This document shows positions 12,291 through 13,216 of a DNA stretch of 36,043 bases, one piece after another. The notes under the pieces are model-generated. The model was not told the origin of the DNA. It saw only the letters and a program-made list of their open reading frames with translations, and searched no databases. A program made the position numbers and the translations under genes. The stretch's first letter is position 1, and each line of letters begins with the position of its first letter. Location: contig NC_068982.1 of NCBI RefSeq assembly GCF_001194135.2, positions 42,384,241 to 42,420,283 of the forward strand, given 5' to 3'. This DNA comes from Octopus bimaculoides (taxonomy: Eukaryota).

Positions 12291-12415
12291 CAGAAGCCGG
12301 CAGTTACATAACTGACTGCTTTAATTAAGAACAATACACAAAACAGAATGACAGACTTTCCTTTGCAATTTACACTCAATTTTATAAAGCCATCAGAAAT
12401 ATAATCACTAATATT

Positions 12416-12997
12416 GAATTCAAATTTTGGCACAAGGCCAGCATTTTGGGGGAGTGAATAAGTAGCTTACATCGACCACAGTACTCAAAAACCTCATAAA
12501 CAAAATATTCTTACATTCAGCCATAAATAACAACGCAAAACCAGCCGCTCCATACTTAACATTAAAACCAGAGACCAATTCTGACCACTGCTCAGCAGTA
12601 TCAAATGGAGTCCGATGAGACTTCATAATACATAGTCATGTTAAAAATATTAAAACAATTAACAGAAAAAAAAAAAAGAATCCAACTTACACATTGATAC
12701 TGTAACAACCTAACTAAATTAACTCTAGCCACTAATAACAAACAACTTATTAAGATTAATGACATGCTAACTTCATGAGAGATACTCTGAGCAACCGCAC
12801 GAACAGAACCTAATAACGCATACAAAAAATTAGATAACCAGCCAACCTCCATCACTGAATAGAGTTATTTTATAGATACTGATATTTATTTTATCGACCC
12901 CGAAAAGATGAAATGCAAAATCGAACTCAGCGGAATTTGAACTTAGAATGTAAAGACGGACGAAATGCCGTTGAACACTCTGCCAGCCCGCCGCCTT
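12416..12997 (-). mobile_element. tRNA-derived SINE (family A) split by a NUMT; 17-bp TSD
   Basis: The SINE tail half is at 12416-12488 and the head half at 12878-12997 (ttttatcgaccccgaaa...gaatttgaac...ctgccagcccgccgcc). The TSD atataatcactaatatt is at 12399-12415 and 13001-13017. Confidence 0.9.
12480..12877 (-). pseudogene. nad1: Nuclear mitochondrial insertion (NUMT) of NADH dehydrogenase subunit 1
   Basis: The minus frames read [37 protein letters not shown] and, after a frameshift, [41 protein letters not shown]. These match the ND1 signatures GWxSNSKYALLGxxRAVAQxISYEV and RxPFDxAEGESELVSGFNVEY. Confidence 0.95.
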
Positions 12998-13216
12998 AAT
13001 ATATAATCACTAATATTACGATCCAACTACGTAGCCTTTGTGAGGTCATACACCTTGTTGAAAATGACAGACAGATATATCTATTCATTTCTTACTGCTT
13101 AAAGAAACGGAAGGATATATCGAATAACGTAATCATTTACACTACTGTATCAGAAGAAAGGATGGGATTGTCACAGCCCCATTTATAATCCCAAATTTCT
13201 GGACCGATAAGAGAGT

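What the first reader, a model, noticed from the sequence alone, without database searches (positions are those of the whole stretch)
12399..13017. Mitochondrial nad1 fragment nested in a SINE, with the whole composite bounded by one perfect 17-bp TSD
Seen: the order is TSD, SINE tail, ~400 bp of nad1, SINE head, TSD. The nad1 sense strand has the same orientation as the SINE, and the left junction agtactcaa can be read as either SINE or nad1 sequence. Two explanations are possible: a NUMT captured later at a break inside the SINE, or a chimera formed by RT template switching onto mitochondrial mRNA during retrotransposition, which would be an unusual RNA-mediated route for NUMT formation. The TSD is still perfect while the nad1 piece looks diverged and frameshifted, which could mean an already old NUMT was copied.
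Basis: partly seen in the sequence, partly recalled or inferred. Interest (0 to 1): 0.7.

Follow-up and report, generated by a model that had tools for sequence, protein, structure and literature searches.

The report
Mitochondrial nad1 scrap inside octopus SINE
A decayed 377-base piece of the mitochondrial nad1 gene sits inside one ordinary octopus SINE repeat, and its junctions look like a chromosome break patched with stray mitochondrial DNA, so it is a routine nuclear mitochondrial fragment, not a new RNA-based route.

Summary
The window is Octopus bimaculoides nuclear DNA. On the minus strand a perfect 17-bp target-site duplication (12399-12415 / 13001-13017) encloses a single SINE. The SINE is split by about 390 bp that encodes the middle third of mitochondrial ND1, in the same orientation.

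Six uninterrupted copies of the same SINE in the window show that the split is exact. Head and tail abut at one profile position, with no SINE base lost or gained. The tail-side junction has 1-3 nt of microhomology. The head-side junction carries 13 nt of filler; 12 of these nt match, at 11 positions, a stretch of the SINE 21 nt upstream (P about 1e-3). That is a templated insertion, a mark of DNA end joining.

The nad1 sense strand holds T6, T12 and several T5 runs, which terminate Pol III. The composite could therefore hardly have been re-copied as a SINE transcript. The perfect TSD is not anomalous. It is 15/17 A/T, while 12 of the SINE's 14 changes are at G/C sites (P intact about 0.14).

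Best reading: an ordinary NUMT captured at a double-strand break in a pre-existing SINE. The RT template-switch chimera would need three or more exact jumps and is unlikely. The host mitogenome and orthologous loci could not be reached. UniProt A0A0L8IBG2 is a spurious gene model of this locus.

The parts
12399..12415 (.). Target-site duplication, copy next to the SINE 3' end (ATATAATCACTAATATT)
   Evidence: 17/17 identical to 13001-13017. A flank repeat of 17 nt or more was seen in 5 of 14173 random placements.
12416..12487 (-). SINE tail (3' part, element positions q514-585), ending ...GCCAAAATTTGAATTC flush against the TSD
   Evidence: nhmmer profile positions 112-174, E 1.2e-14. Aligns with the tails of copies c19, c35, c16 and c21.
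12488..12864 (-). nad1 (ND1) fragment, 377 nt, about ND1 residues 120-245. One frameshift, no in-frame stop in the mitochondrial code. The 3'-most 1-3 nt (T/TTG) are shared with the SINE tail.
   Evidence: Pfam NADHdh E 8.8e-29. PDB ND1 chains E 8.9e-33. tblastn with four of the five reference ND1 sequences (mitochondrial code) starts at 12864; the fifth is too short to reach it. TGA codes a conserved Trp and AGR codes conserved Ser.
12666..12677 (-). T12 homopolymer (nad1 sense) where the reading frame shifts; also a strong Pol III terminator
   Evidence: Three-frame translation and T-run list. The UniProt gene model splices over it.
12865..12877 (-). 13-nt junction filler ATCTATAAAATAA (sense). 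Its last 12 nt are an 11/12 direct copy of SINE 12886-12897. It reads S-M-K-stop where ND1 proteins have S-S-L-G/A.
   Evidence: the repeat finder family D5. It is the only one of 379 insert 12-mers with an 11/12 or better match in the adjacent 45 nt, null P 0.00075. The extended duplicate score is reached by 13 of 25374 random 24-mers.
12878..13000 (-). SINE head (5' part, q1-123), about 21 nt shorter than the heads of c16/c26, with 3 extra nt (ATT) before the usual AAGGCGGCG start
   Evidence: nhmmer profile positions 2-112, E 4.6e-33; alignment.
12886..12897 (-). Template of the filler inside the SINE head (TCGATAAAATAA, q104-115), 21 nt upstream of the copy
13001..13017 (.). Target-site duplication, copy next to the SINE 5' end

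Best explanation
This is a NUMT nested in a SINE, formed in two separate steps.

Step 1. A SINE of the abundant octopus family retrotransposed into this site and made a 17-bp target-site duplication, as other copies of the family do. The anatomy is shown; the mechanism is inferred from it.

Step 2. Later, a double-strand break arose inside that SINE DNA, between ...ATATCAGT and TGAGTACTG.... It was sealed by end joining with a captured fragment of mitochondrial DNA about 377 bp long, internal to nad1. No target base was lost. The tail-side join used 1-3 nt of microhomology. At the head-side join a polymerase first copied 12 nt from the SINE 21 nt upstream, plus 1 untemplated A, before ligation. 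That is the templated-insertion scar typical of polymerase-theta-type end joining. The junction anatomy is shown; the enzyme is inferred.

The shared orientation of nad1 and SINE is a 50% coincidence. Since then all parts have decayed neutrally, with a GC-to-AT bias that spared the A/T-rich TSD. The element has no function. The UniProt 'ND1' protein A0A0L8IBG2 predicted from it is an annotation artefact.
For: - **Species and locus.** UniRef100_A0A0L8IBG2 (O. bimaculoides) equals window 12852-12691 plus 12620-12423, including translated SINE tail.
- **One SINE, exactly interrupted.** The profile match of the head ends at position 112 and that of the tail starts at position 112. With the insert removed, the sequence reads GGGGTCGATAAAATAAATATCAGT|TGAGTACTGTGGTCGATG, collinear with six intact copies.
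- **Family TSDs.** Family members have 11-17-bp TSDs; c19 has 17 bp with 1 mismatch.
- **Filler.** ND1 homology begins at 12864 for every reference that reaches it. The 13 nt before it hold an 11/12 copy of the SINE 21 nt upstream. P is 7.5e-4 by composition, it is the only such 12-mer out of 379, and 13 of 25374 random 24-mers reach the score of the extended duplicate.
- **Literature.** Lineage-specific primate numts join by blunt ends or 1-7 nt of microhomology, and 49 of 90 have no target deletion (PMC2567098). Templated insertions of 2-35 nt copied from nearby flanks are a conserved hallmark of Pol theta (PMC7454005). SINEs make up about 11.6% of an octopus genome, so about one random NUMT in ten should land in one (PMC13282606).
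- **Not an mtDNA contamination or misassembly.** 10 of 47 invariant ND1 residues are replaced and there is a frameshift. One TSD brackets both unique junctions.
Against: - The host mitogenome could not be obtained. The exact mitochondrial end points, the claim that the 13 nt are not mitochondrial, and the age of the transfer therefore rest on comparison with non-host ND1 sequences.
- No empty allele or ortholog with an uninterrupted SINE could be checked.
- The NUMT's decay (about 21% of invariant residues changed, roughly 7-10% per nucleotide) is similar to the SINE's distance from a six-copy consensus (12%). The relative ages therefore do not by themselves show that the NUMT is younger.
- In humans, NUMTs inside retrotransposons are under-represented, 10 of 557 (PMC3467031).
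- TCAGT occurs both at the SINE break end and 9 nt into the nad1 part, so the filler boundary is uncertain by about 10 nt.
- A DNA origin of the fragment cannot be told apart from a captured cDNA on this internal piece.
Confidence: 0.85

Rival explanations
1. RT template-switch chimera. During target-primed reverse transcription of the SINE RNA, the LINE reverse transcriptase copied the tail, jumped to a nad1 mRNA, copied about 380 nt, and jumped back to a SINE RNA. The whole composite and its TSD would then have arisen in one event, an RNA-mediated NUMT.
For: All parts share one orientation, and a single perfect TSD brackets the composite. Bi- and tripartite chimeras made by single and double template jumps and flanked by TSDs are documented (PMC2104539). 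The decay of the NUMT and of the SINE is similar, so a simultaneous origin is not excluded.
Against: - The SINE resumes at exactly the next nucleotide (profile 112/112). A random re-entry would hit that point about once in 200.
- The 12-nt near-copy of SINE q104-115 between the head and nad1 requires a further jump back and forth, three or more switches in all. The 11/12 similarity and the TCAGT microhomology were not used as the join.
- The nad1 piece is internal at both ends, with no mRNA 3' end or poly(A). Known chimeras fuse a copy that reaches the 3' end of the acceptor RNA (established knowledge; PMC2104539).
- Mitochondrial mRNAs are not normally available to nuclear or cytosolic LINE RNPs (established knowledge).
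- The shared orientation is expected half the time by chance.
Confidence: 0.03
2. Re-mobilised composite. A NUMT entered a SINE at another locus long ago. That composite was then transcribed and retrotransposed as a unit to this site, giving a young, perfect TSD around old, decayed contents.
For: The TSD is 17/17 intact, while the SINE is about 12% from consensus and the NUMT has lost 10 of 47 invariant residues. With a uniform rate, P(TSD intact) is only 0.013. The composite starts within 3 nt of the normal SINE 5' end and ends at the normal 3' end.
Against: - The nad1 sense strand contains T6, T12, three T5 and several T4 runs, and the SINE body itself has two T4 runs. A Pol III transcript starting at the SINE 5' end should terminate long before the tail (Pol III termination at T runs is established knowledge).
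- A Pol II read-through transcript would not start at the SINE's own 5' end.
- With base-specific rates (2/63 A/T sites changed against 12/54 G/C sites) the 15/17 A/T TSD stays intact with P of 0.14, so nothing needs explaining.
- No second copy was seen in the window.
Confidence: 0.03
3. Homology-directed copying. A break in this SINE was repaired by synthesis-dependent strand annealing, using as template a paralogous SINE elsewhere that already carried the nad1 insert. An older NUMT would thus have been imported with exact SINE collinearity.
For: The exact collinearity and the decayed state of the NUMT are compatible with it. SINE copies are extremely numerous.
Against: No paralogous composite is known. 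SINE copies in the window differ by 8-17% from their consensus, which is poor homology for such short arms (123 and 72 bp). The model only moves the original capture event to another locus.
Confidence: 0.04
4. Assembly artefact. Mitochondrial reads or two different SINE loci were wrongly joined in a gap-rich short-read assembly.
For: The window has many N gaps, for example from about 13410. The only frameshift lies in a T12 homopolymer, which is error-prone.
Against: The nad1 piece is not the functional mitochondrial sequence (10 of 47 invariant residues replaced). It therefore does not come from mtDNA reads. Both SINE-nad1 junctions are unique sequence, and the same 17-bp TSD lies outside both halves, which ties them to one locus.
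Confidence: 0.02

Closest known systems
NUMTs inserted by non-homologous / microhomology-mediated end joining at chromosomal double-strand breaks (e.g. the 90 human and chimpanzee lineage-specific numts of Hazkani-Covo and Covo 2008, PMC2567098)
   Same: A mitochondrial fragment used as filler DNA. No deletion of target sequence. 1-3 nt of microhomology at one fusion point and a short insertion at the other. Neutral decay afterwards.
   Different: The target here is the interior of a SINE, which is rare in human (10 of 557, PMC3467031). The inserted filler at one junction is a templated near-copy of same-side flanking sequence, not untemplated bases or an opposite-side duplication. The host is a cephalopod, for which I found no NUMT survey.
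Templated insertions of polymerase-theta-mediated end joining (PMC7454005; PMC2943611; PMC2895639)
   Same: A 12-13-nt insertion at a repair junction, copied in direct orientation from sequence less than 100 bp from the break, with one mismatch.
   Different: No experimental link to Pol theta here. No clear priming microhomology could be identified. It is seen at a junction with captured foreign DNA rather than at a simple two-ended rejoin.
Chimeric retrogenes formed by LINE RT template switching (U6-L1 type; bi- and tripartite chimeras, PMC2104539; PMC4476161)
   Same: Several transcript-like parts in one orientation, with a SINE 3' end at the 3' side, all bracketed by one TSD of LINE type.
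   Different: In the known chimeras the parts are different RNAs, and the upstream part reaches its own 3' end at the fusion point. Here the outer parts are the two exactly collinear halves of one SINE, the middle part is internal to its gene at both ends, and a duplicated scrap of SINE lies at one junction.

Membership tests
NUMT (nuclear copy of mitochondrial DNA) | Significant similarity to a mitochondrial gene | tested here: met
   Pfam NADHdh E 8.8e-29, profile positions 116-233 of 298. PDB ND1 chains E 8.9e-33.
NUMT (nuclear copy of mitochondrial DNA) | The sequence carries the mitochondrial genetic code, not the nuclear one | tested here: met
   A Trp conserved in the metazoan ND1 references is coded by TGA. 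Conserved Ser positions are coded by AGA/AGG.
NUMT (nuclear copy of mitochondrial DNA) | Embedded in nuclear sequence and non-functional | tested here: met
   Flanked on both sides by halves of a nuclear SINE with a TSD. It has a frameshift and 10 of 47 invariant residues replaced.
NUMT (nuclear copy of mitochondrial DNA) | Closest relative is the host lineage's own mitogenome | not testable with these tools
   No cephalopod mitogenome was reachable. The protein search returned no true cephalopod ND1. L001/L002 are themselves NUMT-like.
SINE (octopus short interspersed element family) | Short, non-coding, many dispersed copies of the same sequence | tested here: met
   Six further copies of about 150-190 bp in 36 kb, on both strands, E 1e-41 to 1e-55 with the profile.
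SINE (octopus short interspersed element family) | Copies flanked by target-site duplications of LINE type | tested here: met
   Composite 17/17. c19 has 17 bp with 1 mismatch, c26 about 11 bp, c16 about 13 bp with 2 mismatches.
SINE (octopus short interspersed element family) | Head derived from a tRNA or other Pol III gene, with an internal promoter | tested here: inconclusive
   ARAGORN finds no tRNA in the window and Rfam finds nothing at 12300-13100. A B-box-like GAGTTCAAATTCC is visible by eye only.
End-joining capture of filler DNA at a double-strand break | Target sequence continuous across the insert apart from small losses or gains | tested here: met
   Profile positions 112/112 abut; 0 nt lost.
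End-joining capture of filler DNA at a double-strand break | Junctions blunt, with 1-7 nt of microhomology, or with short templated or untemplated insertions | tested here: met
   Tail side: T/TTG shared. Head side: 13-nt insertion, of which 12 nt are templated from 21 nt upstream.
End-joining capture of filler DNA at a double-strand break | An allele or ortholog exists with the uninterrupted target | not testable with these tools
   Six exact-protein look-ups found no other assembly of this genome (one search returned only unrelated contigs).
Template-switch chimeric retrogene | Parts co-oriented, with a retroelement 3' end at the 3' side and one TSD around the whole | tested here: met
Template-switch chimeric retrogene | Parts are copies of different RNAs, and the upstream part ends at its own RNA 3' end at the fusion point | tested here: not met
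   The outer parts are two collinear halves of one SINE. The nad1 part stops at about ND1 residue 245 of about 315, with no 3' end or poly(A).

The most novel reading that the evidence does not exclude
The composite arose in a single retrotransposition event in which the LINE reverse transcriptase left the SINE RNA, copied part of a mitochondrial nad1 mRNA, stuttered once on the SINE RNA, and resumed exactly where it had left. This would be an RNA-mediated route of NUMT formation coupled to SINE mobilisation.
Probability: 0.03. Interest if true: 0.75.

Novelty: new member of a known kind. Interest (0 to 1): 0.15.

Why it matters
It matters little as biology. It is one more NUMT, formed the usual way, that happens to lie inside a SINE.

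It has three modest uses:
- It is a clean, fully resolved example of mitochondrial DNA capture with a templated-insertion scar, in a cephalopod. I found no NUMT survey for cephalopods.
- It shows that a 'perfect TSD around decayed contents' need not imply recent copying when the TSD is A/T-rich and mutation is GC-to-AT biased.
- It flags UniProt A0A0L8IBG2, annotated as ND1 of O. bimaculoides, as a spurious gene model built from a NUMT plus SINE tail. Such an entry could contaminate ND1 alignments or barcoding references.

If the template-switch reading were true, it would be a new route for organelle-to-nucleus transfer. The evidence points away from it.

Tried and rejected
- **Host mitogenome.** The translated NUMT was searched against the 5.8-billion-protein collection. 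It returned only the gene model of this locus, two distant non-cephalopod ND1 proteins and one 71-aa cephalopod-like fragment. The contigs of that fragment (L001/L002) are 75% identical, and their ND1 similarity starts next to about 120-bp tandem repeats. They are NUMT-like themselves, not a mitogenome. The first query shares many 5-mers with any metazoan ND1 yet drew only 36 candidates, so the collection evidently lacks them.
- **Other assemblies, alleles and orthologs.** Exact-protein look-ups of the UniProt model and of four window ORFs next to or inside the locus were all 'not on record'. No host exon was found in the window to reach orthologous introns; the only domain hit is a mariner HTH.
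- **tRNA origin of the SINE.** ARAGORN and Rfam found nothing.
- **Fragile hairpin at the break site.** The family consensus folds into a small CCAGT/ACTGG hairpin (z -3.4), but this copy does not (z -0.9). I dropped it as an explanation.
- **Subfamily test of head versus tail.** The best BLAST partners differ (head c32/c19, tail c35), but the segments are too short to decide.
- **Uniform-rate dating of the TSD.** This gave P of 0.013 and briefly favoured 'recent copying'. I rejected it after seeing that 12 of 14 SINE changes are at G/C sites.
- **Reading the 13 nt at the head-side junction as nad1.** Rejected because every reference ND1 that reaches that far starts matching at 12864, and the 13 nt encode S-M-K-stop where ND1 proteins have S-S-L-G/A.

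Full report
**What the window is.** The translated insert retrieves UniRef100_A0A0L8IBG2, 'NADH-ubiquinone oxidoreductase chain 1', Octopus bimaculoides, 120 aa. That protein is identical to window 12852-12691 joined to 12620-12423 on the minus strand. Its last 22 residues are translated SINE tail. The window is therefore O. bimaculoides nuclear DNA. The database 'ND1' is a gene model of this very locus, with a predicted intron (12690-12621) that hides a frameshift.

**Check of the observation.** ATATAATCACTAATATT occurs at 12399-12415 and 13001-13017, 17/17 identical, and identity stops immediately outside. For random pairs of positions 585 bp apart in the window, a flank repeat of 17 nt or more appeared 5 times in 14173.

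Between the repeats, read on the minus strand (q1 = 13000, q585 = 12416), q1-123 and q514-585 match a repeat family with six other copies in the window:
- 16808-16981 (+)
- 19370-19543 (-)
- 21559-21734 (+)
- 26225-26413 (+)
- 31982-32126 (-)
- 35336-35492 (-)

These were found by BLAST and by an nhmmer profile, E 1e-41 to 1e-55. Several copies have their own 11-17-bp flanking duplications; c19 has 17 bp with one mismatch. The family behaves as a LINE-mobilised SINE. ARAGORN and Rfam do not recognise a tRNA in it.

The middle part matches Pfam NADHdh (positions 116-233 of 298, E 8.8e-29) and solved ND1 chains (fly ND1 residues 119-248, E 8.9e-33). It uses the invertebrate mitochondrial code: a conserved Trp is TGA and conserved Ser positions are AGA/AGG. 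SINE and nad1 are both in sense on the minus strand.

**The SINE is interrupted exactly.** The profile match of the head ends at model position 112 and that of the tail begins at position 112. With the insert removed, the sequence reads ...GGGGTCGATAAAATAAATATCAGT|TGAGTACTGTGGTCGATG.... This is collinear with the intact copies, which read ...AAGTACCAGTTG(A/C)GTACTGGGGTCGATG.... No SINE base is missing or duplicated at the split. Only one T can be assigned to either side.

**The junctions.** *Tail side:* nad1 runs ...AAT ATT TTG TTT ATG AGG TTT, and the next codon, TTG, gives the Leu that all reference ND1 proteins have at that position. TTG overlaps the SINE's T-TG, so there are 1-3 nt of microhomology. 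AGTACT itself is SINE consensus.

*Head side:* tblastn with five reference ND1 sequences in the mitochondrial code starts at window 12864 (q137, L-Y-S-V...) for every reference that reaches that far. It does not start at the SINE break. The 13 nt in between (12877-12865, ATCTATAAAATAA) encode S-M-K-stop where ND1 proteins have S-S-L-G/A. They contain TCTATAAAATAA, an 11/12 direct copy of TCGATAAAATAA in the SINE head 21 nt upstream (12897-12886; the repeat finder D5). Three tests bear on chance:
- Of the 379 12-mers in the insert, this edge one is the only one with such a match in the adjacent 45 nt.
- A composition null gives P = 0.00075.
- Allowing gaps, q124-147 is a near-duplicate of q103-123, with a score reached by 13 of 25374 random 24-mers from the window.

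TCAGT occurs both at the SINE break end and 9 nt into the nad1 part, so the filler/nad1 boundary is uncertain by about 10 nt. Either way, a scrap of the flanking target was re-copied at the junction.

**What this means mechanistically.** The signature has three parts: an intact target, short microhomology on one side, and a short insertion copied from nearby flank on the other. This is the signature of DNA end joining with captured filler DNA.
- In 90 lineage-specific primate numts, fusion points are blunt or have 1-7 nt of microhomology, some carry short insertions, and 49 of 90 have no target deletion (PMC2567098).
- Templated insertions of a few to about 35 nt copied from sequence near the break are a conserved hallmark of polymerase-theta-mediated end joining (PMC7454005; see also PMC2943611 and PMC2895639, listed).
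- SINEs make up about 11.6% of the O. vulgaris genome (PMC13282606). A NUMT landing in a SINE is therefore expected now and then by chance, although in human NUMTs inside retrotransposons are under-represented, 10 of 557 (PMC3467031).
- The shared orientation has a prior of one half.

I therefore conclude, with confidence 0.85, that a pre-existing SINE suffered a double-strand break that was patched with a fragment of mitochondrial DNA. The junction anatomy is shown. Polymerase theta as the enzyme, and DNA rather than a captured cDNA as the fragment, are inferred.

**The template-switch chimera.** Double template jumps by LINE reverse transcriptases do occur and give tripartite, co-oriented, TSD-flanked chimeras (PMC2104539). 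Four things count against that here:
- The RT would have to re-enter a SINE RNA at exactly the next nucleotide.
- It would first have to copy 12 nt of SINE from 8-19 nt further upstream and then jump forward again, making three or more switches.
- It would have to ignore the available TCAGT and 11/12 homologies as join points.
- It would have to use an internal stretch of an mRNA that is normally confined to mitochondria, with no mRNA 3' end at the fusion.

I give this model about 3%.

**The 'perfect TSD but decayed contents' puzzle.** The SINE core differs from the consensus of the other six copies at 14 of 117 positions (12%). With a uniform rate, the chance that both 17-nt TSD copies stay intact would be 0.013, which could suggest recent copying of an old composite. 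However, 12 of the 14 changes are at G/C positions (12/54, against 2/63 at A/T), and the TSD is 15/17 A/T. With base-specific rates the chance is 0.14, which is unremarkable.

The NUMT is indeed old. 10 of 47 residues invariant in the reference panel are replaced, for example SNSKY to SNFLY, ISYEV to ISHEV, AEGESELV to AEQWSELV and NVEY to NVKY. There is also one frameshift in or next to the T12 run at 12666-12677. This corresponds to very roughly 7-10% per nucleotide, the same order as the SINE. Relative age therefore cannot order the two events.

Re-mobilisation of the composite as a SINE transcript is unlikely for a separate reason. In sense orientation the insert contains T6, T12, three T5 and several T4 runs, which terminate RNA polymerase III (Pol III termination at T runs is established knowledge). 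A Pol II read-through transcript would not begin at the SINE's own 5' end, as this copy does. I give re-mobilisation about 3%. I give about 4% to homology-directed copying from an unknown paralogous SINE-nad1 composite.

**Artefact?** The insert is not functional mitochondrial sequence, so it does not come from contaminating mtDNA reads. Both junctions are unique, and one TSD brackets both halves, which ties them to one locus. The only doubtful detail is the length of the T12 homopolymer in a short-read assembly. I give misassembly about 2%.

**What could not be done.** No cephalopod mitogenome and no other octopus assembly could be reached with the tools. They are listed as next steps.

**Verdict.** This is a new instance of a known kind: a NUMT captured by end joining, here inside a SINE, with a neat templated-insertion scar. 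Interest is low (0.15). The useful by-products are the flag on the spurious UniProt ND1 entry and the caution about dating by TSD integrity in a genome with a GC-to-AT mutation bias.

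Noticed in passing
window 12423-12852 (minus strand): UniRef100_A0A0L8IBG2, annotated as O. bimaculoides NADH-ubiquinone oxidoreductase chain 1 (120 aa), is a gene model of this NUMT. It consists of exon 12852-12691 plus exon 12620-12423, with a predicted intron (12690-12621) that skips the T12 frameshift. Its C-terminal 22 residues are translated SINE tail. It is a spurious protein entry.
   Followed up: yes
window 35336-35492 (minus strand), SINE copy c35: This copy has an 18-nt internal deletion that begins at the same SINE position (after ...CCAGT) where the nad1 fragment is inserted in the composite. 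The family consensus folds into a small CCAGT/ACTGG hairpin there (z -3.4), but the composite copy does not (z -0.9). This could be a recurrent break point or a coincidence of about 2%.
   Followed up: partly
L001 1-684 and L002 1-525 (ENA assemblies ERZ17082777, ERZ27289678): Two short contigs from metagenome assemblies carry a cephalopod-like nad1 fragment, 75% identical to the NUMT over 150 nt. Its ND1 similarity starts abruptly next to about 120-bp tandem repeats. This is probably another nuclear nad1 fragment in an unidentified cephalopod, not a mitogenome.
   Followed up: partly
window 26784-27029 (+): An 81-aa ORF matches the HTH domain of Mos1/mariner transposases (Pfam HTH_48, E 2e-14). 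It is a mariner-type DNA transposon remnant, adjacent to SINE copy c26.
   Followed up: partly
window 12960-13000 compared with 16808-16860 and 26225-26280: The head of the composite SINE is about 21 nt shorter than the heads of copies c16 and c26 (GGCGGCG...GGCTGGCAGA against GGCGGCGAGCTGGCAGAAA.GTTAGC.CGCC.GGCGAAATGC). This is either a subfamily feature or a private deletion.
   Followed up: no
window 19340-19570 (minus strand), SINE copy c19: This 5'-truncated SINE copy is flanked by a 17-bp duplication with one mismatch (ATTATCTGAC[G/C]AAGTGC). It shows that 17-bp TSDs are normal for this family.
   Followed up: partly
whole window, e.g. 13210-13260 and from about 13410; 1500-2300; 6600-7200; 31100-31900: The window is a gap-rich short-read scaffold, with many runs of N and (CA)n/(TA)n microsatellites next to the gaps. 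Low-GC windows in the composition profile coincide with N runs, where checked.
   Followed up: no
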